A model generated the notes under the pieces. That model had not been told where the DNA came from. It did no database searches and saw nothing but the letters and a program-made list of their open reading frames with translations. This document shows, piece after piece, positions 23,399-63,492 of a stretch of 64,000 nt of DNA. The translations under genes were made by a program, and so were the position numbers. The stretch's first letter is position 1; the number at the start of each line of letters is the position of its first letter. The stretch covers positions 457,796 to 521,795 of the forward strand of contig NW_018408858.1 of assembly GCF_002113885.1 (NCBI RefSeq), read 5' to 3'. The DNA is from Mizuhopecten yessoensis (Eukaryota).

Positions 23399-23677
23399 CA
23401 ATCATAAAAAAAAGAACATAAACGAAATCGGATAAGTTCCTGTTTTTATTATCAATATAATTATGTTGTCCATGCATCATACGACAACGTCAGCAGAGAC
23501 ATCCCAACATCTTTCGATAATACGAAACGAGACGCCCAATCAAAATAAAACAAATTGTGATTCTCAATGACATTGCATGCTATGGCACAACGGCATGATG
23601 TTTAAAGCGACAACGTGGAAGAAATAAGTAGGTTTGCTCTCACGAGCAATGGCGGACATTTAGATGTTTTTCTTGGT

Positions 23678-26600
23678 TTATTGGTCATCGGAGTCTGTAA
23701 CAGAAAAAAATAACCGAATTCAGCCGAAGTATAAATTCAGTTTCTATCATGATGTTTTTTATTTTTGAAGTAAAAAAAATGGTATTAACTTAAAAAAAAA
23801 GAAAACTTGCCTCTAAGTTAATTTTTGCAATATATTAAACTCTTAAATGAAGCTCATATCAGATTTATGTAACTAGTCCAGTTATACTGAATAGTGAATA
23901 TAAACGAATTCATAAATATATTATTTTATCACTTCATAAAGTATTTCTCTAACCATCATCATTGACTTTTCTTGTTTTAATTATGACGTCATCATTAAAA
24001 CACCTCTGACGTCATTATTGATAGTACAATTATATTATATTAATTGCATTTGAAAAATAGCATGGCCCTTTTCAAAGAATATGTGATACAACTGGATTTG
24101 GAAGTTATACTTCATAAAAAAATGAATCGTAAAAGAGCCAAATTTGCAAACAATAAAACGTATATCTTGACAACTACTCTCTGACACCAATTTCTGGCAA
24201 AAATATCATTATGTGTCTGTTGTCTGATCATTTCGTTTACGTACAATGTAATAAACGAGCGTGTATCAATTTATTCTACAACGGTGCTAATTATGTTTAC
24301 TTGATGGAGCCTATTTGTTGACTTAGGAATAGCTGCTTTTAAACTATTGCATACATCATCACAAAAACAACAATACATAAATACCGTCCACTTCGAAACA
24401 TTCAGTGTCTCCCCTCCCTGACATTCCTGCAAATCAAATATATATGTTTTAAACAATATGACAGGAAATTTTCAACCGACCCAACTAATGTGATTAACTA
24501 TTTTCGGGGTTTTTTCTGATAACAATTAATAATCACTACGGTGCTGACATACAACGAACAAAGTCACAAACAAATACCACTCGAAAATACTAACACTGGA
24601 ACTAGCGGGATTACATATAACAAAGTCCATTGCTAACTCAATACAAATGGTAGATAACACGAGGATTTTGTTAGCTCAATAACTTTGGCATAGTTATTGT
24701 AATATCGAGGCATAATGTTGTCGCACCAAATCTTAAACTTACCCATGTTTCTACAGCATTTCATTCCGCCATCTGTTAAGACATTTCAATTATATTACTA
24801 GTGAAATATAGTATAGTAAATTGCATAGTTAATTGTTATATTCCTTTTTTTTGTATAAAATAGCAGGAGAGAGTGAAAAGAATGAAAAATTATCTGGATA
24901 GCACAATTACAACCAGAAAGCAATACATCAGAGAATCAATACGCAGGTGGGCTACTGGAGATTTCCTTCCTGCAACAACCTGATCATATGACAACAGTTT
25001 CAAAATAATACGCAACATTAAACGGCAGGAACTGGAAAGACATCAAAGCACAAAGAAACAACACGAACTCCGTCAAAAATGAAAGGCAGAATCAGGTGGT
25101 GCTACAGAAAGTAAGCGTTTCGTCAACATGAAGAGACGCCGGTCATTACGTCTGCTGCTGATATTGTATACATCATATAAAACAATCATTTTTCAAACAC
25201 AGATATACCGGAACCAGACCCAGAGAAACAAGATTGTTTTATAATGAGTCACGCGTATTTCTTTTGACAGCGATTAAAGATAACATACATGTCATGGTAA
25301 TTTTAAACCTAACAACTGTTTGGGGCCGGAGGGGCGGGGACGAATAGTGAAAACATAGCAAATTCTTTAAACTCCTTCTTATTCAGTAGGAATGAAAGGA
25401 TTTGTTCCATGTTTGGTCTGAAGCATCCTTTGGTGAAGGGGAACCAATTTTGTATAAACCGTGGATCTGGCCCCCATGGGCCTGAGTGCGGGGCCAAAAG
25501 GGGGTAATAGGGCTATACTGATTTAAGCGACTTCTTCTCTGGAACTAAGAGATGGATATCAACCATATTTGACTGGAAGCATCCCTCAGTAGTGGAGATT
25601 CAAATTTGTACAAATGGTTGGGCTGAGCCCCAGGGGGCTGAGGGGCGGGGCCAAAAGGAGGCAATTTGGCTGTATTGCTACAAACGATTCTTGGAGATGG
25701 GGATTCAAAATTGTACAAATGGTTGGGGTGACCCCCCAGGGGGCTTAGGGGAGGGACCAAAAGAGGGCAAATTGTCCATATTGCTATAAACGACTTCTGT
25801 AGAATTATGCCATGGATATCGATCATATTTGGTCAGAAGCATTCATGGGAGGCAGGGATTCAAAATTGTACAAATGGTGGGGTTAATCGTTATTAACAGC
25901 CTATACCGATATATTTCGTCAACGATATCAAGCACGAGGTTGATCTTTGGATATCATTTAAACAATAACTGGTTGTCTGGATGTAATTATTGTTGATATA
26001 ATTACAAGTGGCCTCTGGCAAATCCCATAAAACCCGCTAGGGTTTATGGTAGATTTGCCAGAGGCCACTTGTAATTATAACAACAATAATTACATCCAGA
26101 CAACCAGGTATTTTTTATGTTGACAGATTTTTCTTTTTTAAGACATATTCCTACAAAAACCATTTGCCCTGCCTCAAAATACATTTCAGGCGGCCATTTT
26201 GTTTGTTTACATATTCCTACACCTGAAACAGGCAGCTGTAATTATAGTCGAGCAGTTGTAATTATAGCCTATGTAATTACACTTGCCCTCTAACACTGTT
26301 GTAATGGGACGGCGCGGGGGCAAATGTAAATATATAGAGATAAACAACAGCAAACTTTTCTCTTCATACTGTTTTAAAAAAAAAAATCAACTTCCGGTTT
26401 TCGGTACGGGTCAAAGTTCGAATGTGTAATTTTGTGAAACAAACTTCAAAAACCTTTTTCTCAATAACCAAGTGACCTAAGGTCATAATATTTATCGAAT
26501 ATTCATGCTCAAGCTGTGGACAATCAAGTTTCATAATATGAAAGACCTTGACCCATGTTCAAAGTCACTTGGGTCAATTATGTTAAAATCTTCAAAAGAC

Positions 26601-29600
26601 TCCTTAACGGAAATGCCCAGGGTATTGATATTTGGTCTGTAGCATGCGAGGTTGATGGGCAACAAGGTTTATGGATCAACTTCCGGTATTTGATAGAGGT
26701 CAAATTCGAACATGCAAATTTGTAACAAATTTCAAAGATTCCGGGACTTTTACTACTGGTGGAAGGGAAGTAACTCGTACTATTTACGAGTTACTTCCCT
26801 TCCACCAGTAGTAAAAGCCCTGGTAGAATTGTTCACCAACAAAATTATAACTTAGAGCAGAAGTTAAACACCTTTTTTATTCTACTATTTTGCTAAAATT
26901 CTGAACTTGATCAAGTTTCAACATTTCAAAATATAAAGTCTTTACCTCAATGGTGTGATATAAGTAAGCCCGTTAAATTGTTAGCCAGCAATTTCTAGTT
27001 GTACTTATGTTTATTTAATCTTTTTAGTGGAACTACTTTTCGCACCATTTTATGAGTCTTATGTGTTCAGTGATTGACTTGTTTTTATTTTGTAACAAAT
27101 ACCTAGTTTTCATACTTTCACTTTGTTGATAACAAAATAAATGATACTAAAACCTACCTTCTTTTGGCTTACACTCTACTTCTCCATCTGTAAAATAAAA
27201 TCAATTAAAACCATTATATCCTTATCATTTCAGGATGTCATCTTCGAAATTAAATGGCTTTATTCTCAATATATGCATCTTTTCTAATCTATGATTTTTT
27301 TATGTGTTAAAGGTGGCTAATTCATTTGTACATTCAAAACATGAAAAATAAAATGTATTTGTAATAAAAAAAAACAAAAACGAGTTCACTAGTCTAGAAA
27401 CAATTGCAGATTCATGCATACCTATGATATCAAAGCAATGTTTTGATTAAACATGAAACTGAATTGCATGGCAGCAAAAGGAATAAAAGCCGGCTTAGAT
27501 CTCAAAGTAGTACCGTCATAATTTTCATTGAACCGGTAAAACTATCTTTCTGCCTTGAGATTGGTCAGTTTTTGATATATGGAACCAATTTAATAGATAA
27601 TAATTCAAGGGGGCAAAACAAGGTATGTTAATCGATCAATAGAACGGAAGCCTTCAATAAAAGAAGGACTTATGTTAGCTCAGTCGGTTTCAATCTCACT
27701 TAACTCTCGTCTTGAAATTAGTGTCATATTCTCCATTTATGTTTAGAAATAATAACTAATTTTAGATAATTGACCTATTTAAATTAAAATTGTTGAAACA
27801 ACAAGAGAATACCGAACTGCCAACAAAACAATAATTCGATCTCGAAATCGATAAAACTATGGCGAAAAAATAATAAGAATAATACACGAAATGTCTTGAA
27901 AAAGTAGAAGGAGACTTACATCAGGTGTTTCGGAAGGTTAAGTGTAATCTGCTCAAACTACAACACCCGCCCTGTAAACCTATGTCAAATCTAAATAATG
28001 TCGCGTCCTGGGTAAAAACAAGGAAAACTGGGAAAGTACAACAAATCAACAAGGCTCACTTATGAGTATAATCAAAAGCAATCAATGTCATATCACACAA
28101 AGAAGGAGCCAATTCCCTTTTGAGATCATGATGGTGAGCTTAAAACTTTTCAATAGTCATCAGCTGATATTTAACGAAACCTTGTGCTGTAAGTTTTTCC
28201 GCCAGCAGTCGACAACTTTTACAAAAACATGATGTTCGGAGCAAACTAAAGAATTCCAAATCAACTGCGATATGTAAATACCGTAAGTAAGCGCGCAGGG
28301 GTGTTACTTTTCAGAAAGGGAAAGTTCGCTATCGGAAAGTCGAAACGAATTTGCTCATTGTACAGCTTAAAAGTAAGGCATCCCTGTTGGTCATGATGCA
28401 AGCAAAGATCGAGGAAAGAAGCTGACGACAAAGAGTCTGTCGTGTCATTGATTTCAAGCTAAAAAGGATATATTTTATTGATAAGTCAAGCAATATATTG
28501 TTATTCAAATACAGCACATCGTCGACATATCTATACTTGAAATTGAAGGACGTTGAAACGCTCCGTTTACTTGTCATGAAATGAGATATTTATTATTTCA
28601 TATTTTATATGTTGTTTTAGATATATAGGTGATATTTTCCATTTTTCACTTGCCATATTTTATACACTCACACTCTGTCTCCAACAATTTCTTCTCTATT
28701 TTCATTTTTGAATTATGTTTTGATATTAATAGTTGCAGAATACGTTCTGCCTCACAGCTGCCTCATGATTAATTTTGATCACAACATCTAACATTAAATG
28801 ACCTATCTAATTTAATTCTTAGCCTCTGAAATAATTCAAGAGGTCGTTCTAATTATTAACGCAAAATAGAAGCATACTTTCCCCCAATTTCGCTATATTA
28901 TCTAATTGTTCTGTATTCATAGTAAATATGAAGAAAACACATATTATTTCGAAAGAATTGAAGGATTTGCATGAATGAATTTCTGATAATTTCTTTAAAT
29001 CATGATTTCAAGTTCAACACAAAGGTTTTTTTATAGGCTTTGAAATTTGAAAACACTTAAGACCACTAAGGATTCCTTTTCAGAATCCATCTTTTCTCCA
29101 AAAGTTGAGTATTGAAAACATCTTGATATCTTATTTATTCAAGCCAGAAAACGAACTGGCGGACCTCTTTCGATATTTTGTGATTAATTTTCTATTGTAT
29201 AAAATATAGGCATTCTTTTAATGGAAAACAATGAAAAAACATCCTTTGGCGTATCGGATGGACCGTTTAAGTATTATTTTAGTAAAAAGTAGATAATCAC
29301 TTTCTTTTAACCGGTTATGTTAGCAAAGAAACTAACTTTTAACTGATATGTTTATATAAGCATCCATGCATTGTTTTGCTTCTCATCCTAATACAAACTA
29401 TAAATAATCTTTAAAATAGATAAATGCTATTTGAAATCTAATTTAATGTCTGAAACAAACTAAAAGGAGACTTTCATTTTGATCGAATATACTTGCAATT
29501 TTTAACACATAGTACTAACACACACGAGTTAAACATGGCGCATGTCGGAATCAGACAGGCTTACGTATCCCTTTGTGTACAATATTAAGGTGTGATCAAT

Positions 29601-32310
29601 GTACTATACATACGGATGTTGGCACAATCAAAATCTCCGTCGAGCACTTCAAGTTCACCAGGCAATAAGTCATCATATGGCATCTGATACCCACACAGAT
29701 ACACCATAAAGGATGCTTTCTCACTCCAATACCAGCTGAAGGAATCGACTACAATAGACACATGATTAATCAAGACACGCTTCGATCATTATACCACTTT
29801 CACATCCTCAGTCCCAGGTGCAAATCGCACTAACGCTTATTAAATTGTATGCGATTTCATCTGGGATTGAGGATACCGCTAATTCTAACATCTTAGGCAT
29901 GTAATCAACAATTTTATAAATAGTTCTCGGCTTGAGTTATTAGTTTTTTTTCAAACCTATTCACTATTAAATCAGTCAGTTCCTGCAATATCGGTTGCTA
30001 ATTTAATATAAGAGTATTGCTTAACTTGACAAGGAGATGTCATTGAGTAAAATTCTCAAAAAAAACAAATCTTTAAAATGCATGGAATTTTCTTTCAATA
30101 CACATATTTGCTTTACACCCTTGAAAGATAAACGTAAGACACATAAATGTGAATATGTCATGAAAAAAGTAAGCGAAAACTTGCCGATGTTACAAATACG
30201 TACATCAAAAATTTGACTGACTTTGATGGCGAGTGTCGCTACTCTGTAATCTTTAAATGATAGGTACCAGCCTAGCGATTGGTCTGTTTTTTATAACTGA
30301 AATACATACTGCCTTGGATTTTGTTATTACATGTTCAAGAGGTGTATGGATAGAGGAACCCTTGAAATTCGAGGATAGAATTCAAATAGAGAAAAACACC
30401 TTTTAACAATTCAATAAGACGGTGCAAAAACACAACATTGGTAATATGTACAATAATATCCAAATGGTCGTTTTGTTCGTTTAAGACTCATCAACGGTCT
30501 CAAAAAATCTATTTCTAGTGAGACTTTAACCAGAGGATTGGTTGTTGTTGAGAAGTGTTGACTCAGTTAGTCAATCGCCAACTATCGCTATCAACGCAGA
30601 GGTTAAAGTGAACAGAGATACTAAAGATTTTTCCTAATCAATATTTCGCGGTTTTAAACAAAATTTGTAATTATCAGAGGTTTATTTAGTGATTTTATAA
30701 CATGAAGCGTTAAATAGTTTCGTTTGATCTCGTTTTCATGAAAATAAATAGATCTAGAAAAATAATATTCAAATATATGTTAATGAGTTTATTGACTTAT
30801 TTCAATAGAAATATCATCCGGTTGACTTGTTACTTTTTCCAGTACCAGTATAAACATAACAAACGGTGGTGGGAACTGACATCCTCGAAGGACAGGTATC
30901 AGCCTAGCGATGGACCGGTTTCTTTTTACCTGAACCCCATCAAATAACTAAATGCGTGCCTTCATTTTTGTGATGACATAGTGAGCGTAACTGCTAGAAT
31001 TTCGATGATTGGAAACAGATTACATTTTAATTTGATATTTGCAAGCGAGGGCACAATAAACGATCAATTCAGATATCAAGTAGGTGATGCGTTTACTTAA
31101 TCAGGATGAAACAAAAGTGAGTTATGTTTTGTGTTGATATGGATTTACATGCACGCCAGTGGGGAAACATGTTTGAAATGTAAATCGGTGTTATTAAACA
31201 AAATTAAAGAAAAATTCGTCTGCAATGATTCAGCACCTTATATGCTTTTGTTACAATATAGATGGCAATTTAGTCAGATCTAACCTTAAGACTCACACGT
31301 GATGACGTAGTCTGTGCCGATATCCAACTGTACGCCACACATGGAGTCGAATGCTGCCGTGTGCAGATAAAGCACGTGTTTGCCTCCAATCCTTTCCAGT
31401 GCGGTCTGTAATAAAACGATCGTATTTTAGAGGAGAACACCATCAAAATTATTGTAATCAGTTAAAATGACTTCCTCAGTAATCCGTATTTATTTCACGT
31501 GAAATTGAATATTAATGATATTTTTTTCCTTATTGGTATACATCAGTGAACGTCTCTATCTTGCATATCAACAAACATAGACGTACCTCTGTTGCTTGAA
31601 TGACACTTGTGATCTCAAACGCATACAAAAATTGGTCATCAAATGGATCATCGCGTCGACGAGACAATAATGTCTGATTCAGGACCGTGCCTCTCACAAC
31701 TTGGATAACAAATTCACAGGAATTAAGTAACTGATCAATACCAAACATAACTAATCGAACTATGCATCATAAAAATCTGCAACGTGTTCCTTTTATCTTT
31801 GGAAAGTGACCTTTTTTTTTTTTTAAATACAATTTAATATCAAAGGCGAATACTTTTTAGTATCTTTTTGTGTTCATGAATGAATGATAATTTTTAAACA
31901 TCAAAACACTCAACAAAGATCTATCTGAAATTATGTGTATGCGACAAAAAATATTATCAACATAAAGAATAGAAACATCATCACTTAAATCTTTCCGAAA
32001 GATACTTTTAACAAAAAGACTAAAGCATCATAAAGTATGCTTGATAAATATTTTGTATCTAAAACTGGTAATACTCACATGAAATTTCATTTCTTATGAG
32101 TGATTTTTCCATTTACCAAGATGAAACAATTTGTCTATGGAATATAGAAATAACATGCAATGTTTATAAAGGTATTTTTATCTGTCGAGAATTAAACTTA
32201 TCTTCCTTGCAGTATTGATTGCGTAGGTTGCCGTTCAGACTGGAACATGAACAGGCTATACACTGCTCGATGCCTGTTATTGCCAAACACAGAACTATCA
32301 TCCACGACAT
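23678..32310 (-). CDS. TIMP/NTR-domain secreted protein (TIMP-B) with a micro-exon-encoded Cys-rich tail, about 197 aa; the first coding exon lacks a canonical donor, so possibly damaged
   Basis: Exons 32310-32193, 31699-31587, 31405-31297 and 29748-29614, then micro-exons 27187-27158, 24772-24743 and 24426-24385, and terminal exon 23694-23678. Translation: MSWMIVLCLAITGIEQCIA|CSCSSLNGNLRNQYCKEDKFIVRGTV...HTAAFDSMCGVQLDIGTDYVIT...YLCGYQMPYDDL...FDCANI-HGEVECKPKE-DGGMKCCRNM-GMSGRGDTECFEVD-DSDDQ*. Exons 2 and 3 (113 and 109 nt) are the same size as in TIMP-C. Confidence 0.75.
25300..25890 (+). mobile_element. HINE/Helentron-like core-repeat element (about 120-bp internal repeats) in a TIMP-B intron
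   Basis: Repeated GGGATTCAAAATTGTACAAATGGT...GGGGCCAAAAGG...AAACGACTTCTTCTCT units, GC-richer than the background. Confidence 0.6.
25964..26112. mobile_element. Palindromic (foldback) MITE-like element with about 70-bp arms
   Basis: CTGGTTGTCTGGATGTAATTATTGTTG...TAATTACAAGTGGCCTCTGGCAAATC pairs with GATTTGCCAGAGGCCACTTGTAATTATA...CAACAATAATTACATCCAGACAACCAG. Confidence 0.8.
26385..26740 (+). mobile_element. Second HINE-like core-repeat fragment
   Basis: TCAACTTCCGGT...GGTCAAA..TTCGAA..TG is duplicated at about 26388 and 26677, with a GTGACC/GGTCA-rich core typical of these elements. Confidence 0.5.
26741..26823. mobile_element. Perfect hairpin / internally deleted MITE: 33-bp arms, 5-nt loop
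   Basis: CTTTTACTACTGGTGGAAGGGAAGTAACTCGTA (26747-26779), loop CTATT, then the exact reverse complement (26785-26817). Confidence 0.85.
28100..28575 (-). mobile_element. Degenerate Penelope-like retroelement reverse transcriptase fragment
   Basis: SFNFKYRYVDDVLYLNN (RT catalytic YxDD in a Penelope-type context), followed across frameshifts by KLYN, NFPFLKSN and YGIYISQLI-like segments. Confidence 0.75.
29804..29874. repeat. Short inverted repeat / mini-MITE
   Basis: ATCCTCAGTCCCAGGTGCAAATCGCA ... TGCGATTTCATCTGGGATTGAGGAT, arms of about 25 bp. Confidence 0.7.
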
Positions 32311-35373: not shown

Positions 35374-36219
35374 TCTGAGAACTATTCCATTCCTAATTTC
35401 CGCTTACAATCTTCACTCAACTCGTTCATACCTTCTACTTTAAGACTATGGAATGAGCTTGACACTAATATTAAAACTGCACATTCTTTTAAGAGCTTCA
35501 CAAACTGCCTCAAAAAACAAAATGAAACATTTAAAGTGCCTGTTTTTTATTTAGCCGGTGACCGTAAGTTAAATATTTTACTAACCAAACTCCGTCATAA
35601 ATGCAGCCCTTTAAATGATGATCTCTTTAATGTTAACCTAATCAACTCTCCTATTTGTGCATGTGGATATCCTAATGAAAATGCTCATCATTTCTTTTTT
35701 ACATGCAGTATATATACTGATCAAAGAGTTGAAATGTTTAGAAATCTTCATGAATACTTACCTCTAAGCTTAGAGAAATTATTGTATGGCCATGAAGATT
35801 ATTCGAGTGACGAAAATAAAAATGTATTTATATATGTCCAACAGTATGTATCGAGTACTCGCAGGTTTTAAATTTGGTCACGTTCTTCTGTCTCCTCTCC
35901 AACAGTCCTCATTATCTTTCATATTCATTTCTTAGCTTGTGTCCGTATTACATGGCATAACGTACACTTGTGTGTTCCTTATTATTTTAGTAATCCTCTG
36001 TAATGTTTAACTTTCTTTTAAGTGCACGAGAGCGTGAATGCAAGAAGTGTGCGTGTGCTGGAATGTATGTAATATAGGCATGTGATGGGCCATTCAGTTA
36101 CAGCCAGTGCGGTAGAAACGAATTTTCGAGAAAGGATGGAATGAAAAGGAGAAAGACACAAAGCACGGGACGTGACGAACTGTTGAATAGTTGAAAGTAT
36201 GGAATAGTGCCAGGATATN

Positions 36220-38243: not shown

Positions 38244-41200
38244 ATGGGATGGATATTGCTCGCCCTGGTATTTGTGGCAGCTGTCAGTTTTGACCACAGT
38301 GAAGGCTGTTCTTGCGCGGGACTCAACGACCTTGCGTTTCAGTACTGTAACGACGAAAAGGAGTTGAGTACGTATCTATAATAACGTTTAGCACTACAGT
38401 CGACTTTAATTTCATTGTGGATTTGCCATAGTATTATTATTCCGGCATTGTAGCTTCGGTTTTAATATTTTTCTATTAGTAGTAAACAATAGTACATGTA
38501 TATATGTAATAAATATAACATCAGTATCGCCTACGTAGATAATTGTTACTTCACGAATACTAGGACCCGAATTCATAAAACTGTTCTCATGCTGACTCTC
38601 ATATACTGTGCTCAAACCCGATTCCTTGTCTCTTCCTTATGGAAGAAATTCGGAGAGAATTAAAGACTTAACTGTTCTAAATATTTATTTTATTGAGTGA
38701 TGTAAAAAGAAAAAAGTATATTTCGTGAATGGGGAGAACGAATAAATATATGATATCAAAGTTTCAGTCGGTCTTGACACGTTGAGACATGTTTAGTACG
38801 TATATTGTTTAGATATAAAGTACAATTTTGATATTACAGATATCCGATTTGAGTGAAGTGATTAGATATATAATTTTCAAATACACTTATATGACTTGCG
38901 AAAGTGTATTACTATAAGGAGGCTACAAAATTCTCATTAATGTAAAGTAAAAAGTATTACATATCGTAACATGATTTTTTTGTGATACCACCAGTAACTA
39001 ACACCAGACAGTATATTTACTTGCCATTCTCCATATCAAACATTTGAAGAACACCAATAGCAACGTTAGGGACGTAGAAATACTTATTCAAAATAATCAG
39101 TTTCAGTTTCATAACATATGACGGTGTGTATTGTACCTTCTTGCAAGCTCTACATCTAAAACTGCTTCATGTCTCTGGTACAATTCTGTGTTATATATTA
39201 CCTACTTCCGAATATTGACGATGCTTGTGTTAACGGATAAATATGCCTACATTTTGTATGTTCAACGTCCTGTTTACCAAAGACGTCTTCAGTGTAGAAA
39301 CAAGTCTATCAAATGTAAACAATGTCAACCTTAACGTAGACAGAATTTTAATTGTTCCCCTTTATTTCCTTTCAAAGCGATTCTTGCCTGGAATTACTCA
39401 GAATACAACAACAGACCTTTTCCTCAGATTCACCTTTTTACTAGACACCTTAATATTGCCGTGCACGAAGATGTGATGATAAGTAAGATGTTTATCCTAA
39501 AGTTTGTACTTTATTATTTGTCACTTTGTTTCCGTTAGTCCTTCGTGGTGTAGCCCTGAACGAAACACTAGATGATGGCGAAACTATCCAGACCTGGGAT
39601 GACGTCAGCAGTTATGCATTTTGGATAACGGAAGTCGTCAAAGCTACAGGGGTAAGTTCATTACCTTACAGGTATAACTCTTCAACTCCCCTCTCAAAAC
39701 TAACTCTCTCGTCTGCTAATATACAGAGTATTTAAGGTCATAGTCAAATGATTTTGTTGTGGTTTCGAGTCGTTTCGTGATTCATGAAAGAAAATGAAAA
39801 GTATTTTTGCAAATTGAATATAAACAGATTGCTGATCAAATAAGACTGCGTTAATTTGAAACACAGATGCTCATTAGTATTGCCCGGAAGTGAATTTTGT
39901 GAAAATAGGGAGGAGGATTCCTATAAAGTTTGCCGTGTGGTAGGAACGCAAGATACCAAAAAGTTATATTTGTGAAAGCATTATCAATGGTAAATTCTTA
40001 TTTTATCTTTTCTTAATGTAAATAATATAAAACTAACTACTCTAAGACATGCACGTTGCATTTTAATATTATTTTGTGATCTGAGTAAGAATGTCGTGGA
40101 TGGTTTCATTTGATTAAATTCAGAATGCCAGTAGATTAATTGAAGGAAAGAACGTCATCAACATTCAAGCGGGTATGGAAGGTTCCATGTGCGGTACCAG
40201 TTTAACAATTGGCGTGGAGTACGTTATTGTATGTGAGTACTCTAAAAAAAAAAAAACATAAGCATTTTAAATATAAGTAGTCTACTAGTTGATGCGAAAA
40301 CAAAAGGTTCTTGTGGCATTATCGCTTAACCGTTTCTATCCGACCTATGCAAGAACATGTTTCCAATAATTTAAGGACGCCGGAGGCTCTCTCATATTTC
40401 TTAATGATCCTCATTTGTAGACCTTCTAGTCTTGAGGTACATCAAGCACGGAGCACAGAGACGGACACAGACTAGCAACTTAAGGGAATATCTCCCAACC
40501 ATTTCTGGTTAAAACTCTCATTACAATCCCTGTCAGTCATCATACTGCTGAATCATTAAAGAGTTTCATTGCGAGTGTTTTGTAATTACAGTTACCCCCC
40601 CNNNNNNNNNNNNNNNNCACCCCCCACCCCTGCGCGTTTAGCACCTGTTTACCACTCTAAATGTGAAAAAGTTCTTTCTTTTAGATATGAAAGTCTGTTG
40701 TTGGTATATCTTAAATAAGTGGCCTCTGTTGCTGGGGGTTTTCCGTGATATTGTTCCACATTATGATGAATGTACTTGCTTCGATGTCGTACATTTCTTG
40801 TGCTATCTTGACTGTTTCGAAATATCCGCGCGGTGTCATCTTTATGCTTTTGTAGGTAGATTCAGGTTTTTAGTCTTTCTTGGTAGGACAGATTTCATAA
40901 TCCAGGAAGCTGTTTGGAGGTTCTTCTTTGTACCCCTTCTATTTTGTATGTACATTGCTTGACATGGAGACCATTATGAACATGAAAAATCTAGATGTGT
41001 TCGTACCAGACTCTTATACAGTGTTTGAAGTTTCTTTTGATGACTGCAGACAATGCGTTTGCCTTTCTGATTTGTTACACATATATGATAACTCATAAAT
41101 AAATAAATTTATGATGTCAATAATGACTTTTTGAGGATGTGCACATGCTTATTATTCACCTTAAATGACTATAAAAACATTTTAAAAGTCTAAGAAAAAC

Positions 41201-44200
41201 TGGTCAGTAGAAGTAGATGGTTATGTCGTACTACAGGTATATAAACAAAGATAATGTCCACTTTTTCTTTTTCTTTTTTACTGTTCCCGGTCAATTGTTA
41301 TCACAAGCACGAAAACAGTATCAATGACATATTCCAGGGGTGTACAGAGCGAAATTGAGCGTAACCCCTGGATATCGAGGATGCCAGTAATGATATTGAT
41401 AATGAAATAGACGTATCAGTAAACTTGCAGCTGAAATGTACTTTATTTCATACTTATTTTTTTTTTTTTATCTCATCCATATGTTTAGTGCACGAGTCCT
41501 TAAGGATTTCCTTGTGCGACTGGGTAGTGCCTTATGATGAACTGCAACCCTGGGATCGAGAAGTGGTTGATGATGAACACTTCAACTGCATTATTAGAAG
41601 TATGTATCAGAAATAGAAAATCAATCTTCCTTTGATCTATTCAGTCTATTGACTTTTATTTAAACTTCAAACAGTCATTCTATTGACGTTTATGATTTTT
41701 TTATCATTAATGTATCTCAAGTTCACGGTTAAATTACTGTGCAAATTAGTTCGGTGAATTTTGACATATTGTTAAAAGCAAGAGTATCGTCTCTAACATA
41801 TCAAAAAAGGCCATGGCATAAACTCTAGGAAATGCATTTTGTAGAAAATTTAACCTAGCTGTATTACATAACAGCTTTTAATTCTCCTCGACAGTTTTCA
41901 TGATTCGAAATTCATTAATTATATTTGCATTTTTTGTTTGCAGACTGCATTCCTATGGGAGGTATGTAAAAAAATATACAGGCTATTTTCAATGGAAGTT
42001 ATGTACAAACTCTGTATCTACTGACTGTGTTTCTATGGGAAGTATGTATTTACAATTTTTTATATACAGACTGTTTTTCTATGGAAAGTTTGTGTACACA
42101 AACCTTTATGTACAGGCTGATTTTCTATGGGAAGTATGCATTTACAAACTTTTATATACAGACTGTTTTTGTTTCCGAAGTATGCTCAATCTTTTTTTAT
42201 CTACCGGGTTTTTTTCTATAAGAAGTATGTACAAACGTTTTTTTACTGTTTTTCTATGGAAAGAATGTATTAGAAATTTTAATATATATACTGTTTTTCT
42301 ATGGAAAGTTTGTATTTACAAATTTTATACACAGACTGTATTTCTATGGGAAGAATGTATTTACAAACTTTTATATACAGACTGTTTTTTAGGAAAGTAT
42401 ATACGAAATTCCATATTCCTGTTTTCTTTTGGAAGTATGTATTTACAATTTTTTATATACAGACTGTTTTTCTATGGAAAGTTTGTGTACACAAACCTTT
42501 ATATACAGACTGTTTTTCTATGGGAAGTATGTATTTACAAACTTTTATAAACAGGCTTTTCTTCTATGGGAAGTATGTACAAACTTTTATTTAATGTTTT
42601 TTTATATAAGAAATATTTACAATTTTTCTATACACAAATGTATTTTTTTATGAAAGGTATGTACACACTTAATGATTTATATAGGTTTTGTGTTCTGTGA
42701 GAAATATGAACAAACTTTTTATACGTAGACTATTACTTTATACGTGTTTCTATGGGTGGTAGTATATACAAGCCTTCGATAGAAATGACGTCGCTCCTTT
42801 TATCAGAGAAGGGAATTAGGCATCTAACAATTATAAATATAAAAGTTGTATCAGATATGCAGATAAACAAATATAGAGTCAAAGTAATTTCCAATTCAAT
42901 TGTCAGTGATCAATTCACGTCGTCATTTTATTTTAAACGTGAATGGTTTTTAATATTCATTCAACCCTTGACCTCAATTTTGTTCATTTATTTTTCAAAG
43001 ACGGTTTGGACATATAAAAATGCCGCCATAATAAAGTTAGTTCTTCTTCCGACATAACTCATCTTTATTTATTTATGAGTTAATAAATAAAGTAAAATTG
43101 TTAACTTATTGCATGAACATTTTTGTAATCCCCAGATATGGAGCTGATGTGCTGTAATGAGGGTAAGTAATAAATATAATTAAAAAGTATATTTAATGTC
43201 AGATTAATATCGTTATGGAAACATTCCTTTTAATATATATTGATGGTGACACTTCATTTTCACTATATTGGAGTCTAGAGAACATAACAGGAGAATTACA
43301 TAATGGAAGCCACTAACTAACTATCATAATGTCTACAGTTAATTAGAAAATTAATAATCCATCCCGCCAACAACTTCCGTTTTAACAATAAAATATGCTT
43401 TTTTACCCTTTACTTACAGATCAAAGTGGAACAGTTACCTGTACCAGCTACGAAGGTATATATCATTTCCGAAGAAAACAACTATCGATACCAGTCCTAA
43501 TTTGTAACAGAATACTGATATTTTTATTTATAACTTTACATATATATATCAACACTTGTGTGACCGCACAACGCACCAAAAATAGCGTACGCACATTGTG
43601 CATACATCGTGCACACATCGTCCGCACACCGCACATCGTGTAACGTTGTGCGATCCCACAACTGCAAATATTGTATGGACAGAGAGATCACTTATAAAAG
43701 GAATGCTAAGAGAATGTTGCATTTGATAATTATGATTGTGGAATGGCTTTCAGATGTAATACTTAGTATGTCTTTTATAAATTTGTCTTTCGAGATGTTA
43801 CGTGGATATTGCTTTTGTCATTGTTCAATATTTTTAAAACCTGGGTCAACTTCAGAAAACAGAAACTGTCTTCAAAAGGTCGTCTCGTCCCAATAGAAAT
43901 GAAATTGATGTCAAAATCAAACAGTCGATCACATACAGTCTTCTTTTACAGGTTATAATTAAAATCATATTCTCAATTGAGTTTTTAAAATGTCTGTTTT
44001 ACAGATTGTGTTACGGACCAAGGTATGTATTCGTACAGAAACATAATATCTATTAAATATAAATTTTACTTATTTTACAACAATTATGAAACAAGTTATT
44101 ATATCTTATGTTAATATCTATTATTAGTTATATAAAAGCGTACGTGTCAACAAATTTAATTGATATGAATATAACCTGTATATTACCACAAAATCTGTAC

Positions 44201-45682
44201 GTCACTGGAAAAAAAATATTTAAGCTATTAATAGTATGATTCGCTTAAAATTCTATATTTCGCTAAAGCAATTCCAAATTCGTATAGATATAGGCCTTTT
44301 TTAGTCAGCCTCCGCAATAATGTCACAGTCGATTCTCGTGTTCTCTACATCAATCCCATGAATGTGCCCACTTTATCAATCAGTCCTAGTTTAACGTAAA
44401 AAGTCATGGCGATCCTGTTTATGTACTTGTTTTCTTTGCCAACTTCTATTTTGAAGGTGGGGTATATAAAATTTCATTTTGGTTAAACGCTGTGGTGTAT
44501 TTCGGCTTAATTCATTGACGCTGTGGTATATAACGTCATTGTGTGTTGACGTGTAGCGCAATCTGCACTTGCGCTTTGTGGTTGTAGATTTTTTCTAATA
44601 TTAAATGTAAACCTATACACGCTCTAGTCATCATGAAAACAGGGTCCTTTTTGTAATGTATTCAATAAATACAATTTTCTGATATTACAATGACCTTCTA
44701 TGACTATGTAAACCTGAAACAAACTTTACGTACAACTACTCAAATGTAACACATTCGATTGTTTCTTTGTAATGACAATCATAGACCGTACCGTTAATTT
44801 GTAATAATTATGAATTACGTTTTACATTATCAGTTGAAGAGACGACCCATTGCTGTACAGCATGTAAGTAACGCCAATTTTAACAAATCAGAACAAAAAT
44901 ATCTTTATTCTTTTCTTTAAGTCCTATTTCTACATTTACTATATATTTCTTTTGTTTCTACACGATGCTGATATAAATTGAGTAGCACTTCATCGTATTG
45001 TCATTGTTTCTGATACAGACATTTCTGCTGGTTTTAGTATAAATGATGACCAACTGTAAAACACGTGTAGCTGCCATGTTGCAAAATTATTCTTTTCTTT
45101 TACAGCAAACGAAGTGCCGAACGCATGTGTGGACTATCCAGGTATTGAATATCTCTATTTTTAATATAAACATATACATACATGATCAAAAAATGATTCT
45201 GTAATAGATATGTCAAAATGAATGCTAAAACTTCTTGCAATTTGTTTCTACAAGTACTCATAAAGTAGCTACTGATGTGAAGCATAGTGTTATTCTCAGT
45301 TTTTAGTCTTTCAAAATAGTTCCGCGAACATAACTCATCAATATAAACAATCGCCATAAAATTAAGATTACTCAGGTAACTTATAGAAAACAGTGAATGA
45401 AACAATGAACTTTGAGTTGTATTTCCAAAAATAGTTGGTTATCAATGGCGTTAGAGATTAATGACGTCACTGACCTAATTTATCTTACCTATATATTCCT
45501 ATAATATCTTCTTAATCATTAATTGCATTGAAGAAGTACTGCACTAGAGATAATGTTATACGTATGGGTAAAGATTGTAAGACATTTCACCGGTAAAGAA
45601 GTTCATACCATCGTACTAGTACACATAGCGCAAATATTTTATCTTTTATGGTTTCTTTACAGGTTATTTAAAGAAAAAGTAA
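38244..45682 (+). CDS. TIMP/NTR-domain secreted protein (TIMP-C) with two micro-exon-encoded Cys modules, 11 coding exons, 213 aa
   Basis: Exons 38244-38367, 39539-39651, 40124-40232 and 41489-41599; micro-exons 41944-41961, 43136-43162, 43420-43455, 44005-44022, 44834-44863 and 45106-45141; terminal exon 45663-45682. All are GT-AG and in frame (642 nt). Translation: MGWILLALVFVAAVSFDHSEG|CSCAGLNDLAFQYCNDEKELILRGVA...GSMCGTSLTIGVEYVIV...SLCDW...FNCIIR-NCIPMG-DMELMCCNE-DQSGTVTCTSYE-DCVTDQ-VEETTHCCTA-SNEVPNACVDYP-GYLKKK*. Confidence 0.85.
41935..42770 (+). repeat. 46-bp degenerate tandem array made of copies of TIMP-C micro-exon 5 plus its splice sites
   Basis: Unit (tatatacag)ACTGTTTTTCTATGGGAA(gtatgtatttacaaactt) versus the original cag-ACTGCATTCCTATGGGAG-gtatgt. 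Period 46 (42070/42116/42162 and 42463/42509/42555). Confidence 0.88.
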
Positions 45683-48488: not shown

Positions 48489-51129
48489 TCAGGAATCACA
48501 ACTAGCCGAAACACTTTTTTCAAAAAGTAGAATGTGAGCAACTGCAATTATCAGAAAACATATTTTTCCGATGATATAGTGGCACAAGGACCACATGTCT
48601 AATCTCGGAGGCATTTTCTTTATACCGATGAAGCCATTATCTTTCGTTTTCCGGACTGTTTATCCCTCTTCTTTTCCGGTGGTGATATTAGACGTCGGTA
48701 CATTGATAGCCATGATGACGGAGTCTACAGTGATCAAACTGCTACTGGCCATTACCATCATGAAATACATTACTGAAACATATGATACATTATTAACGCC
48801 ATGTTATCATACAAAGAAATGAAGCAACATATGCTGTATTCCATGCATTATACACATACAGTCAAGTCTAGAGTGTAAACATATACAATATATACTAGCG
48901 TCTAAAAATATACACTAGTGTATATACACAGAGTATACACATCAGTGTAAACGAATACAGTAAACGAAACAGTGTAAACACATACAGTTAACATAAAAGT
49001 ATAGACACATACAGTATACATACCAGTGTAAACACATATTACAGTAACACCACACTGTTAACGCATACCGTTTACATGTCAGAGTAGAACATACAGTATA
49101 CAGGTAGATGTTAACACATTCAGTATACATACCAGTGTAAACACACACTATATACACTACAGTGTAAACACATACAATATACACTACAGTGTAAACACAC
49201 ACAGTATACACCACAGTGTTAACAATTAAATTATACACTACAGTGTAAACACACACGGTATACCATACAGTGTAAACACACACGGTATACCATACAGTGT
49301 AAACACACACAGAATATACCATACAGTGTAAACACACACGGTATACCATACAGTGTAAACACACACGGTATACCATACAGTGTAAACACACACAGTATAT
49401 ACCATACAGTGCAAACACACACAGTATATACCATACAGTGCAAACACACACGGTATACCATACAGTGTAAACACACACAGTATATACCATACAGTGCAAA
49501 CACACACAGTATACCATACAGTAAAAATACCGTTTACACTACAATGTTAACACAAACTGTATACACACAAGTATAAACACTTGCATTATAAATGCCATTG
49601 TAAACACATAATGAATATCCGCCAATGTTTACATAAACAGTATACCCGAAAGTGTAAACACATTCAGTATACACCATATAGTGTAAACATAAATAATATA
49701 TTCTACAGTGTCGGCAAACAACACAGGTCACACAACAGGTTTAAAAAGTGACATGGAAAAAGAAAATTAAAAATTAAGATTATACCAAAACTTATCGAAA
49801 AAGAAATGTACAAAGATCCCAAATAAATAGATAAATGAAAATCTATCAATGTATCATGAGGACATCCTGGGGGTTTGTAAGTCACCTTAATATAATGTTT
49901 ATCAAATTCAACTCATTACCTTTATATTAAAGTTTTCATGAACAACAAAGTTTTAAAACAGCATATAAGGAAACAAGAAATATAACTCCATACATGATAG
50001 AAATAAGACCAGTCATGCATGGTTATAAAAACATGCGAAAGTAAAAACAAAAATGTATATTTAATTCAAATTTGAAATAAAATAAATTTAAAATTACCTT
50101 TCATGGCACAAACGAACTTGCAACGTGAATTTCTTTCTTTTAGTAATACAAGATTGGACCTGTTCTTTTTTCACAACAGAGCGCACTACAATATGAAAAC
50201 GTGGAATTCTTCGACACCGTTTGGTATCGGAAAGGTTTGAGGTGCTGAAAACAAACAACCGACTATGACACAACACATACATGTACCTCAAATATATCGA
50301 TAAATGGATTATTTATTGATCTCAAACCACCTTTACTTTCACCAACAGCTGCTACAATCCGTCAGTAAAGTCCTCGGTTTTCAATCTTTTCAACCATAAT
50401 GTATGCCATTGGAGTGAATTATCAACAAAAAGAGTCGGCCTGGAAATCTTCTAAAACAAGGATGATTTTTTCCGTTTTCGGTCCGGATCAGAACGGCTTA
50501 AAATTTGAACTCCACGTTTTCATAAAGCAGTGCACTCTGGCCCAACACCAGACATCTTTCTGTCGAAATGTCTTAGTCTGGTGTCGGGGCCAGAAGATAC
50601 TCGAGCTAGAATCATAAGTATTTTACCTATTATTGGTGTAACGTCTGAGTTTGTTGGAAGATGTTTCTCCATCTGAGTGAGAAATACCATACACGCGAGT
50701 AGTATAGTCATCCGACCGCCTTCCTCCGTCGGTATAGAGTACACACCCACAGTTACAACAGGCAGAATTACTGAAGGAACAACTATAAGGAACACATAGA
50801 CATCGTTTTTCGTCTCAGTACAATTTTGAAATTCAAACCTGGGCCAGCATTCTCATCCGGAGTTTCCAAAGACGTCGACACCAAGCTCTATGATTGACTT
50901 CCATGGACGGGAAATGTGATTCTGATTTCATCAGGGACTTAAAACTTGATGTAATTATTTGATTTGGGACCGAGGTTCATTCTTATATTGCATGTCTGAT
51001 TGTCATAGGGGGAGGTTTGTGGATTCATATCACAGGAAATGGTTATTACTCCGGACGGCGAAAAGGTCACGAGACCATCTGACGTAATTTGATATATATC
51101 ATAAAGGATCAGAAAATGTGATTAATCCC
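48489..51129 (-). pseudogene. Pseudogene of a nicotinic acetylcholine receptor-like (Cys-loop) subunit, paralogue of 62334-63492
   Basis: Exons about 51129-50627 and 48772-48489 align with the intact paralogue (CDMNPQTSPYDNQTC, LPTNSDVTPIIG, EKSVSASCDS*). They carry in-frame stops at 50939-50941, 50888-50890 and 48660-48662, an FPYD>SPYD change and a 12-nt deletion at the M2 entry. Upstream exons were not identified. Confidence 0.88.
48850..49720. repeat. About 27-bp minisatellite (TACAGTGTAAACACACACGGTATACCA) in the intron of the nAChR-like pseudogene
   Basis: Clear units at 49240-49520 with degenerate flanks. Source of the repetitive CVYTV/CLHCMV ORFs. Confidence 0.9.
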
Positions 51130-62333: not shown

Positions 62334-63492
62334 TCAGTTATCACAACTAGCCGAAACACTTTTTTCAAGAAGTAGAACGTGAGCCGCTGCAATTATCAGA
62401 AATGATATCGCTCCGAGGGTATAGTGACACAGTGACCATCTGTTTAATCTAGGAGCTCTTTTCTTTATCCCGACGAAGCCAGTATTTTCTGTTTTACGAA
62501 CAGCTTCCCCTTCGTCGTTTCCGGCGGTGATATTATATGTTGGTAAATGGTTAGACATGATTATAGAGTCAATCGTCACCAAACTACAGCTGGCCATTAT
62601 CATCATGAAGTACAGGCCTGGAAATATAAATTTAATAGTATCGTTACGTTAGGTTACCATACAAGGCGCATAAGTGAAAGAAACCACTGTTGGTATCCAT
62701 GATTTTGACCGTTACAAGCTATGACAGGATTGAAAAAGCCAAAAGAAGTAGGAGGTATGGCACTCCTAGTCCACTAACCATGGTCAGAAATAAAATAAAA
62801 TGTTTTGCTTTTCCGATTGACGAGCCTGAATATCGCTTGTGCCAAAAGAAATAATTGTTGTACTGTGAAATTCGAGAATCACTAGATTGAAAATAAAAAG
62901 TTTACAAATCATTTTTTTTAAGCAAATCGGTCCCTGATTTCTATAACAGAAGAAATTAGAGTTATTCGTACCTATAATTGGCGTAACGTCTGAGTTTTCC
63001 GGTAGATGATCCGCCATCTGAGTTTGAAATACCATAAACGTGAGTAAAATAGTCATCCCACAGCCTATCTTCTCGCCTTCCTCCGCCGGTATGAAATACA
63101 CAGCCACAGTCACAACAGACAGAATTACTGAAGGAACAACTATGATGAACACAAAGTACGTCGGTTTTCGTTTCAGTACAATTTCAAAATAGAAATCGAT
63201 GCCAGCATTCGTATCCGGAACTTCCAAAGACGTCGACACCAAGCTCCATACGTGACTTACGTAGGTTGGAAACGTGTTTCTGAAGTAGTCAGGGACTTTA
63301 AACTGGATGTAACCCTTTGCTTTAATTCCGTAGTTCAATTTTACAGAACATGTCTGACAGTCATAGGGAAAATTTTCTGGATTCATAACACAGGAAACCG
63401 ATATAACTCCGGATGTCGAAACAGATACAGCACCACGTGACGTAATATGATATGCATCGTCAAGGATGTTGTCCAGGAAGTTTGATCCGATT
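62334..63492 (-). CDS. Nicotinic acetylcholine receptor-like, non-alpha Cys-loop ligand-gated ion channel subunit (last two exons; 5' exons not identified or beyond the window)
   Basis: Exon 63492-62972 has the Cys loop CVMNPENFPYDCQTC, LKRKPTYF, M1, M2 GEKIGCGMTILLTFMVF and LPENSDVTPIIG. Exon 62617-62334 has M3, a short loop, M4 and TGA. Splice sites are GT-AG, phases are compatible and there are no internal stops. Loop C has no vicinal CC. Confidence 0.9.

What the first reader, a model, noticed from the sequence alone, without database searches (positions are those of the whole stretch)
23678..27187. Paralogue TIMP-B independently shows the same micro-exon triad (one module)
Three minus-strand phase-1 micro-exons (27187-27158, 24772-24743, 24426-24385; 30, 30 and 42 nt) with canonical sites give C-KPKEDGGMK-CC-RNMGMSGRGDTE-C. 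This has the same C / CC / C distribution and the same 9-residue first spacing as TIMP-C, despite low sequence identity. Finding the pattern in both paralogues argues the micro-exons are real, and that module number varies (1 versus 2) within the family.
Basis: seen in the sequence. Interest (0 to 1): 0.7.

Follow-up and report, generated by a model that had tools for sequence, protein, structure and literature searches.

The report
Scallop TIMP-like gene micro-exon tail
Three tiny exons (30, 30 and 42 bases) do encode the four-cysteine tail of a second Yesso-scallop TIMP-like gene and are conserved in the king scallop, but the model is already in RefSeq, I found no RNA reads for it, and the gene's first exon has no normal splice donor in this assembly.

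Summary
Observation confirmed. The three minus-strand exons sit exactly where stated. All are phase 1-1 with AG/GT sites, and they read C-x9-CC-x12-C followed by a short acidic end.

By sequence alone they are not unique: 179 open phase-1 AG..GT candidates lie in the same 7.6 kb. Two other results settle it:
- The chain is identical to the C-terminus of the public Mizuhopecten yessoensis model OWF39303.1 / XP_021376451.1 (LOC110465155, 174 aa).
- The Pecten maximus orthologue (LOC117331811) has the same 30/30/42-nt phase-1 exons in the same order. Exon identity is 71-90% against near-random flanking introns. Tail dN/dS is 0.22 at dS about 0.74.

TIMP-C, re-read here, has two such triads, so "one versus two modules" holds.

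Caveats:
- Three RNA-seq runs showed zero reads on any exon of the stretch laid (the last 41 nt of exon 4 through the terminal exon), so splicing in this species is not shown directly.
- Exon 1 (signal peptide plus the CSC N-terminus) is conserved, but its donor reads AT instead of GT. Both public models therefore start at an internal Met and lack the inhibitory N-terminus.
- The RGD motif is not conserved (RGP in Pecten).

The scan has already reported the sister gene TIMP-C on this same window. This is a variant TIMP architecture, already annotated but not described in the literature searched. Interest is modest.

The parts
32193..32310 (-). TIMP-B exon 1 coding part. ATG at 32310, then signal peptide, mature N-terminus CSC and the third N-domain Cys. 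Absent from both public models.
   Evidence: ORF. 76% identical to P. maximus residues 50-86. pN 0.10, pS 0.71.
32191..32192 (-). Expected exon-1 splice donor. It reads AT where P. maximus TIMP-B and M. yessoensis TIMP-C have GT.
   Evidence: Alignment A2. The only GT nearby (32197-32196) would give phase 2 and a frameshift against the phase-1 acceptor at 31701-31700.
31587..31699 (-). TIMP-B exon 2 (begins in phase 1, ends in phase 0). The public model extends it upstream to a Met at 31748.
31297..31405 (-). TIMP-B exon 3, containing the MCGV cysteine.
29614..29748 (-). TIMP-B exon 4 (phase 1-1, 135 nt), with the last two N-domain cysteines (LCGY, FDC). Donor C|gtatgt.
   Evidence: 100% match to P0001 residues 92-135. 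112/138 identical to P. maximus.
27158..27187 (-). Micro-exon 1, 30 nt, phase 1-1: (H)GEVECKPKE.
   Evidence: P. maximus L001:14597-14626 is 27/30 identical, and all 3 differences are synonymous.
24743..24772 (-). Micro-exon 2, 30 nt, phase 1-1: DGGMKCCRNM.
   Evidence: P. maximus L001:15715-15744 is 24/30 identical, with a GC donor there.
24385..24426 (-). Micro-exon 3, 42 nt, phase 1-1: GMSGRGDTECFEVD.
   Evidence: P. maximus L001:16266-16307 is 30/42 identical. RGD is RGP there.
23678..23694 (-). Coding part of the terminal exon: DSDDQ plus stop TAA (23680-23678).
   Evidence: P. maximus L001:16489-16505 is 14/17 identical with the same stop position.
25255..26454 (.). Repeats (transposon-like) inside the intron between micro-exons 1 and 2. 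This is the only part of the stretch with RNA-seq coverage, mostly reads 95-99% alike that run on into unlike sequence, so they come from other copies.
   Evidence: tables 1, 2 and 7.
41944..45682 (+). For comparison, the TIMP-C tail: six phase-1 micro-exons (41944-41961, 43136-43162, 43420-43455, 44005-44022, 44834-44863, 45106-45141) and a terminal exon starting at 45663. That is two C/CC/C triads.
Evidence: splice-site enumeration and in-script translation.

Best explanation
The three micro-exons are genuine coding exons of a divergent, scallop-lineage TIMP-like (NTR-domain) gene, LOC110465155 of Mizuhopecten yessoensis.

In this subfamily the canonical six-cysteine C-terminal TIMP domain (about 65 residues) is replaced by a short acidic tail.
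- The tail carries four cysteines (C-x9-CC-x12-C) and most likely forms two disulfides, a small hairpin-like knot appended to the N-domain (inferred).
- It is built from a triad of symmetric phase-1 exons: one carrying the first Cys, one the CC pair and one the last Cys.
- Because every exon is phase 1-1 and a multiple of 3 long, the triad can be duplicated in tandem without breaking the frame. That is what TIMP-C shows (two triads). TIMP-B and its P. maximus orthologue keep one.

Shown here:
- exon positions, phases and conservation;
- purifying selection on the tail;
- identity with the public models;
- TIMP-type N-domain.

Inferred:
- the disulfide pattern;
- secretion;
- that the tail modulates partner or matrix binding as TIMP C-domains do;
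- that the public models rest on transcript evidence.

In this assembly the M. yessoensis copy cannot join its signal-peptide/CSC exon to exon 2 by a canonical splice, so whether it still makes a working secreted inhibitor is open.
For: -: sequence, sites and phases are as stated.
- exon 4, searched by reference, hits P0001 (OWF39303.1 / XP_021376451.1).
- the only relatives found are P. maximus XP_033746601.1 / XP_033746600.1 (74% identity), with tail NGEVECKPKEDGGMQCCRHTGLSGRGPDECFDVEDSNEQ.
- in locus L001 that tail is encoded by 30/30/42-nt phase-1 exons in the same order, but with quite different intron lengths. Exon identity is 90/80/71%, against 27-40 of 60 in the flanks (random expectation 28.5 +/- 3.6).
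- tail dN/dS 0.22 (dS 0.74); N-domain dN/dS 0.13 (dS 1.0).
- Pfam PF00965 scores 24.3 bits (P0001) and 32.7 bits (P0003), both over the 23.1 cut-off.
- the best solved-structure hits are TIMP-2, aligned from Cys1.
- TIMP-C has two triads with introns at the same places relative to the cysteines.
Against: -: zero depth on every exon bin laid (the last 41 nt of exon 4, me1-me3 and the terminal exon) in three RNA-seq runs from three studies, each sampled at 18-24%. So there is no direct proof of splicing or expression in this species.
- P0001 is seen on one contig only (the genome scaffold). No transcript-derived copy exists in the 15-billion-protein collection.
- the exon-1 donor is AT, so the annotated product lacks the signal peptide and Cys1-x-Cys3.
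- the AlphaFold model is unusable (mean pLDDT 41), so the tail's fold and disulfides are inference only.
- the tail matches no Pfam family and has no other relatives.
Confidence: 0.88

Rival explanations
1. The exons are genuine in the lineage, but the M. yessoensis copy is a silent or decaying gene, or a null allele captured in the assembly. Loss of the exon-1 donor prevents production of a secreted protein with the Cys1 N-terminus that TIMPs need for metalloproteinase inhibition.
For: -: the donor is AT where the orthologue and the paralogue have GT.
- no other in-frame canonical donor exists.
- both public models start at an internal Met and have no signal peptide.
- no RNA reads in three libraries.
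Against: - All downstream exons are intact and open.
- Exon 1 itself is still conserved (pN 0.10), so any loss is very recent.
- A single-base assembly error or polymorphism would give the same picture.
- The tissues of the RNA runs are unknown. Scallop TIMP paralogues are often foot-specific (PMC5975577).
Confidence: 0.3
2. Chance pattern. The gene ends by read-through of the exon-4 donor (stop at 29585), giving an N-domain-only TIMP. On this view the micro-exon chain is an annotation artefact that propagated between pipelines or species.
For: -: many chance candidates (179) exist.
- the read-through ORF ends 10 codons after the donor (stop at 29585).
- no RNA evidence.
Against: -: the same three exons, lengths, phases and stop codon are conserved at dS about 0.74, while the flanking introns are randomised.
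- me1 has only synonymous changes.
- All four tail cysteines are conserved.
- The exon-4 donor GTATGT sits at the same codon position in TIMP-B, its orthologue and TIMP-C.
Confidence: 0.04
3. The symmetric micro-exons form an alternatively spliced, diversity-generating cassette, like the micro-exon genes of schistosomes.
For: All the exons are phase 1-1 and multiples of 3 long, so any could be skipped in frame.
Against: - Skipping me1 or me3 would leave an odd number of cysteines.
- The two P. maximus RefSeq isoforms differ only at the 5' end.
- Purifying selection acts on all three exons.
- There are no reads to test it.
Confidence: 0.05

Closest known systems
Canonical TIMPs (e.g. TIMP-2; Pfam PF00965; molluscan 'canonical TIMPs' of PMC10755359)
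   Same: - A signal peptide followed by Cys-x-Cys.
- An N-domain with six cysteines at the conserved places (CSC, C15, xCGV, LCxY/F, xDC).
- An intron after the third Cys at the same place.
- PF00965 over its cut-off, and TIMP-2 as the best solved-structure hit.
   Different: - There is no six-cysteine C-terminal domain. HMM positions 118-183 are unmatched.
- Instead there is a 39-residue, 4-Cys tail (39 residues in both species, after ...NI) from three micro-exons plus a 17-nt terminal coding piece.
- That makes 8 coding exons, against 4-6 (mostly 5) reported for molluscan TIMP genes (PMC10755359).
M. yessoensis TIMP-C, the head-to-head neighbour in this window (38244-45682, +). Probably LOC110465153, which PMC10755359 lists as a 'pseudo TIMP'.
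   Same: - The same N-domain layout.
- The same phase-1 donor three codons (plus one base) after the last N-domain Cys.
- The same C / CC / C triad of phase-1 micro-exons, with introns at the same places relative to the cysteines.
   Different: - Two triads (18/27/36 and 18/30/36 nt) instead of one (30/30/42 nt).
- CC-x9-C instead of CC-x12-C.
- A basic end (GYLKKK) instead of an acidic one (DSDDQ).
- About 40% identity in the N-domain.
- Equating LOC110465153 with TIMP-C is my inference from the adjacent locus numbers. It was not tested.
Sbp8-1, the atypical byssal TIMP of the scallop Chlamys farreri (PMC5975577)
   Same: A scallop TIMP paralogue with an altered cysteine complement in its C-terminal part, from an expanded and often foot-specific family.
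   Different: Sbp8-1 keeps the 12 canonical cysteines and adds two free ones that drive polymerisation. TIMP-B has lost the canonical C-domain altogether. No sequence relation was tested here.
Micro-exon genes (MEGs) of Schistosoma (from my own knowledge, not tested)
   Same: Runs of very short symmetric exons, multiples of 3 in length, encoding part of a secreted protein.
   Different: In MEGs most of the coding sequence is micro-exons and alternative splicing creates variants. Here only the tail is made that way, and nothing indicates alternative use.

Membership tests
TIMP (PF00965) | Sequence match to the TIMP N-domain profile above the curated cut-off | tested here: met
   - P0001: 24.3 bits, and P0003: 32.7 bits, against a cut-off of 23.1.
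- TIMP-2 chains are the top four solved-structure hits, E 0.004-0.009.
TIMP (PF00965) | Mature N-terminus Cys1-x-Cys3 directly after a signal peptide (the free alpha-amino group of Cys1 binds the catalytic zinc) | tested here: inconclusive
   - It is present in the P. maximus protein.
- It is encoded by M. yessoensis exon 1 (32310-32193).
- But the M. yessoensis exon-1 donor reads AT, and both public models lack this exon.
TIMP (PF00965) | Six N-domain cysteines at conserved positions (three disulfides) | tested here: met
   CSC, C15, MCGV/LCGV, LCGY and FDC/LDC align with TIMP-2 C1, C3, C13, C72 and C101. The sixth is placed by position only.
TIMP (PF00965) | C-terminal domain with six cysteines (three disulfides) | tested here: not met
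   - Profile positions 118-183 are unmatched.
- The tail has 4 cysteines in a C-x9-CC-x12-C pattern.
- The tail alone matches no Pfam family.
TIMP (PF00965) | Inhibition of matrix metalloproteinases | not testable with these tools
   This needs recombinant protein and enzyme assays. Sbp8-1, another atypical scallop TIMP, was reported to lack inhibitory activity (PMC5975577 abstract).
Schistosome-type micro-exon genes | Most of the coding sequence made of symmetric micro-exons, with alternative splicing producing protein variants | tested here: not met
   - Only 102 of about 594 coding nt lie in micro-exons.
- The P. maximus isoforms do not differ in the tail.
- Alternative splicing could not be tested, because no reads mapped.

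The most novel reading that the evidence does not exclude
The C / CC / C exon triad is a duplicable cassette that defines a pectinid TIMP-like subfamily. Module number changes by tandem triad duplication, and even whole 3' halves duplicate, as in the 2.9-kb P. maximus repeat. The resulting small disulfide or thiol-bearing tails adapt these proteins to a non-inhibitory role, such as matrix or byssus cross-linking. The M. yessoensis copy would then be in the first stage of loss.
Probability: 0.25. Interest if true: 0.45.

Novelty: new variant of a known kind. Interest (0 to 1): 0.3.

Why it matters
Bivalves have greatly expanded the TIMP family. Published censuses describe genes of 4-6 exons and set aside 'pseudo TIMPs' without looking at their C-terminal parts.

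This gene and its neighbour show a different route of diversification. The canonical C-domain is replaced by a small cysteine module assembled from symmetric micro-exons, and the copy number of that module differs between paralogues. It is a tidy natural example of exon-triad duplication building a repeat protein.

It also shows that 30-nt exons can be recognised by cross-species conservation when RNA is lacking.

The practical weight is limited. The exons are already in RefSeq, the family seems confined to scallops, and no function is known.

Tried and rejected
- **RNA reads.** X1, X6, X11 and X9 were laid on 23655-29654. No read fell on any exon there. Only the intronic repeats at 25255-26454 were covered. 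X1, guessed to be RNA, behaves like low-coverage DNA (unique intronic pieces at depth 4-10), so its 0.14 word share was not a transcript.
- **Structure.** AlphaFold2 of the mature P. maximus protein with a 2-row alignment gave mean pLDDT 41. I discarded it and ran no fold search.
- **Homologue collection.** Only the M. yessoensis and P. maximus proteins were found, so no wider table of module numbers could be made.
- **Protein atlas on the tail.** The best hits were TIMP-4 and TIMP-3 clusters at 0.79 and 0.76, below the level that means anything.
- **Own-genome searches.** There is no second TIMP-B copy or haplotig. The canonical TIMP loci lie on other contigs.
- **P. maximus TIMP-C orthologue.** Its first micro-exon was not found in the roughly 1 kb of L001 downstream of exon 4. 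This is inconclusive, because the locus ends there.
- **RGD motif.** In me3 it is not conserved (RGP in P. maximus). I rejected it as a functional claim.
- I redid it with coordinates only.
- **Joined model.** Exon 4 was searched by reference, and after that only database proteins were used. The joined-model search was left out.
Full report
**What is there**

The window is from the Yesso scallop, Mizuhopecten yessoensis. It holds two head-to-head TIMP-like genes: TIMP-B on the minus strand (32310 down to 23678) and TIMP-C on the plus strand (38244 to 45682).

| Exon | Coordinates | Length | Flanks (acceptor / donor) |
|---|---|---|---|
| me1 | 27187-27158 | 30 nt | tttattttacag / gtaggt |
| me2 | 24772-24743 | 30 nt | atgtcttaacag / gtaagt |
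| me3 | 24426-24385 | 42 nt | tttgatttgcag / gtattt |

- All three are phase 1-1.
- They follow exon 4 (29748-29614, donor C|gtatgt) and run into a terminal exon at 23694, with the stop at 23680-23678.
- Together they read ...FDCANI HGEVECKPKE DGGMKCCRNM GMSGRGDTECFEVD DSDDQ*, which is C-x9-CC-x12-C.

**Is it more than chance?**

From the sequence alone, not clearly.
- The 7.6 kb after exon 4 contain 179 open phase-1/1 AG..GT segments of 15-63 nt, 68 of them with a cysteine.
- With moderate splice-site filters 21 remain. These include me1 and me3, but not me2.

Two independent lines settle it.

1. **Public annotation.** I searched exon 4 alone, by reference, against 1.8 billion representative proteins.
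- It hit P0001 at 100% identity.
   - P0001 is OWF39303.1 and XP_021376451.1, 'uncharacterized protein LOC110465155' of M. yessoensis. UniRef calls it an NTR domain-containing protein.
   - So the micro-exon chain is already in both the original and the RefSeq annotation.
2. **Cross-species conservation.** The only relatives found are the two isoforms of Pecten maximus LOC117331811 (P0003 and P0004). They are 74% identical, with tail NGEVECKPKEDGGMQCCRHTGLSGRGPDECFDVEDSNEQ.
   - In the P. maximus locus L001 this tail is encoded by exons of the same 30, 30 and 42 nt. They have the same phases and order and the same stop position, but quite different intron lengths.
   - Exon identity is 27/30, 24/30 and 30/42. 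The 60-nt flanks score 27-40 of 60, against 28.5 +/- 3.6 for unrelated 60-mers.
   - All three differences in me1 are synonymous.
   - Over the tail, dN/dS is 0.22 at dS 0.74. Over exons 1-4 it is 0.13 at dS 1.0.
   - At that divergence unconstrained DNA is randomised, so these 30-42-nt segments have been kept as coding sequence.

**What I could not show**

The one read-laying run covered 23655-29654 with one contig run and three raw RNA-seq runs from three studies.
- It gave zero depth on every exon bin.
- Coverage fell only on the intronic repeats at 25255-26454, mostly as reads that run on into unlike sequence.
- The run guessed to be RNA (X1) covers unique intronic pieces at depth 4-10 and looks like thin DNA.
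- P0001 and P0003 are each seen on a single genomic contig in the 15-billion-protein collection, so no assembled transcript was available either.
- Splicing in M. yessoensis itself is therefore inferred, not observed. The tissues of the runs are unknown, and scallop TIMP paralogues are often foot-specific (PMC5975577).

**What kind of gene it is**

- Pfam TIMP (PF00965) is over its cut-off for both proteins, at 24.3 and 32.7 bits against 23.1. It covers only profile positions 2-118.
- The mature P. maximus protein aligns with TIMP-2 from Cys1 through CSCS, FC..D..VIR, CGV.L and LC.F.VPWD.L.
- The canonical C-terminal six-cysteine domain is absent.
- The tail matches no Pfam family and no other protein.
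- Published censuses give 4-6 exons for molluscan TIMP genes, mostly five (PMC10755359). TIMP-B has eight coding exons.
- That paper's table lists the neighbouring locus LOC110465153 as a 'pseudo TIMP'. It does not list LOC110465155.
- I found no paper that mentions this gene, or micro-exons in TIMPs.

**One module versus two**

Enumerating phase-1 micro-exons with good sites after the TIMP-C exon-4 donor (41599|gtatgt, at the same codon position as in TIMP-B) gives six exons and a terminal exon at 45663.
- They read N-CIPMG / DMELMCCNE / DQSGTVTCTSYE / DCVTDQ / VEETTHCCTA / SNEVPNACVDYP / GYLKKK*.
- That is C-x9-CC-x9-C-x5-C-x10-CC-x9-C.
- In all three triads the introns fall four residues after the first Cys, two to three residues after the CC pair, and four residues after the last Cys.
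- The modules are therefore homologous. The two TIMP-C triads share exon lengths (18/27/36 and 18/30/36), which points to an internal duplication in TIMP-C.

**A defect at the 5' end**

- Exon 1 of TIMP-B (32310-32193) encodes a signal peptide and the CSC N-terminus, and it is conserved (pN 0.10, pS 0.71).
- Its donor reads A|AT. Both the P. maximus orthologue and TIMP-C have A|GT at the aligned position.
- The only nearby GT would shift the frame against the phase-1 acceptor, which is itself conserved.
- This explains why both public models begin at an internal Met inside intron 1 (31748), with no signal peptide and an odd number of cysteines.
- Three readings fit: a one-base assembly error or polymorphism, a rare non-canonical splice, or a very recent inactivation. 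Together with the lack of reads, I put about 0.3 on the last.

**Mechanism, as far as it goes**

- Shown: a TIMP-type N-domain followed by a conserved 4-Cys acidic tail made from a triad of symmetric exons.
- Inferred: the four cysteines form two disulfides in a small hairpin-like appendage.
- Inferred: this appendage replaces the partner-binding role of the canonical C-domain.
- Inferred: the symmetric phase lets the triad duplicate.
- The AlphaFold model was too poor to use (mean pLDDT 41).
- The RGD in me3 is RGP in P. maximus, so I make nothing of it.

**Verdict**

The exons are already annotated, and the architecture is a variant of a known family that the literature I searched does not describe. 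Interest is modest.

Noticed in passing
window 32191-32192 (minus strand), with exon 1 at 32310-32193: The TIMP-B exon-1 donor reads AT where the P. maximus orthologue and TIMP-C have GT. Exon 1 is otherwise conserved, yet both public protein models omit it and start at an internal Met at 31748.
   Followed up: partly
L001:14040-16888 and L001:17028-19888 (Pecten maximus): The 3' half of the orthologue (exon 4, the three micro-exons and the terminal exon) is tandemly duplicated, 96.3% identical over 2878 nt. The micro-exon copies and their splice sites are intact. The exon-4 copy carries a 6-nt insertion. This could be a real recent duplication or an assembly artefact.
   Followed up: partly
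L001:2184-4625 (minus strand, inside the P. maximus TIMP-C orthologue): A tandem array of about 30 units, 71-76 nt apart, each resembling part of TIMP exon 3 (residues 149-164 of P0004). It is reminiscent of the spare micro-exon copies reported earlier in the M. yessoensis TIMP-C intron.
   Followed up: no
window 25255-26454: Repeats in the me1-me2 intron attract heavy RNA and DNA read pile-ups, 95-99% alike and with loose ends, so they come from other copies of a transcribed repeat family. There is also a 50-nt perfect palindrome around 26760-26830.
   Followed up: no
window 62784-63386 (-) and 50520-50795 (-): Two open frames match the transmembrane region of neurotransmitter-gated ion channels (PF02932; 48.7 and 28.8 bits). 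These are exons of one or two Cys-loop receptor genes next to the TIMP pair.
   Followed up: partly
window 35536-35871 (+): An open frame with a weak zf-RVT match (PF13966, 22 bits, below the cut-off). Probably a retroelement remnant between the two TIMP genes.
   Followed up: partly
window 23680-23685 (minus strand): AATAAA overlaps the TIMP-B stop codon (CAATAAACC). It is not conserved in P. maximus. The 3' end of the transcript is undetermined.
   Followed up: no
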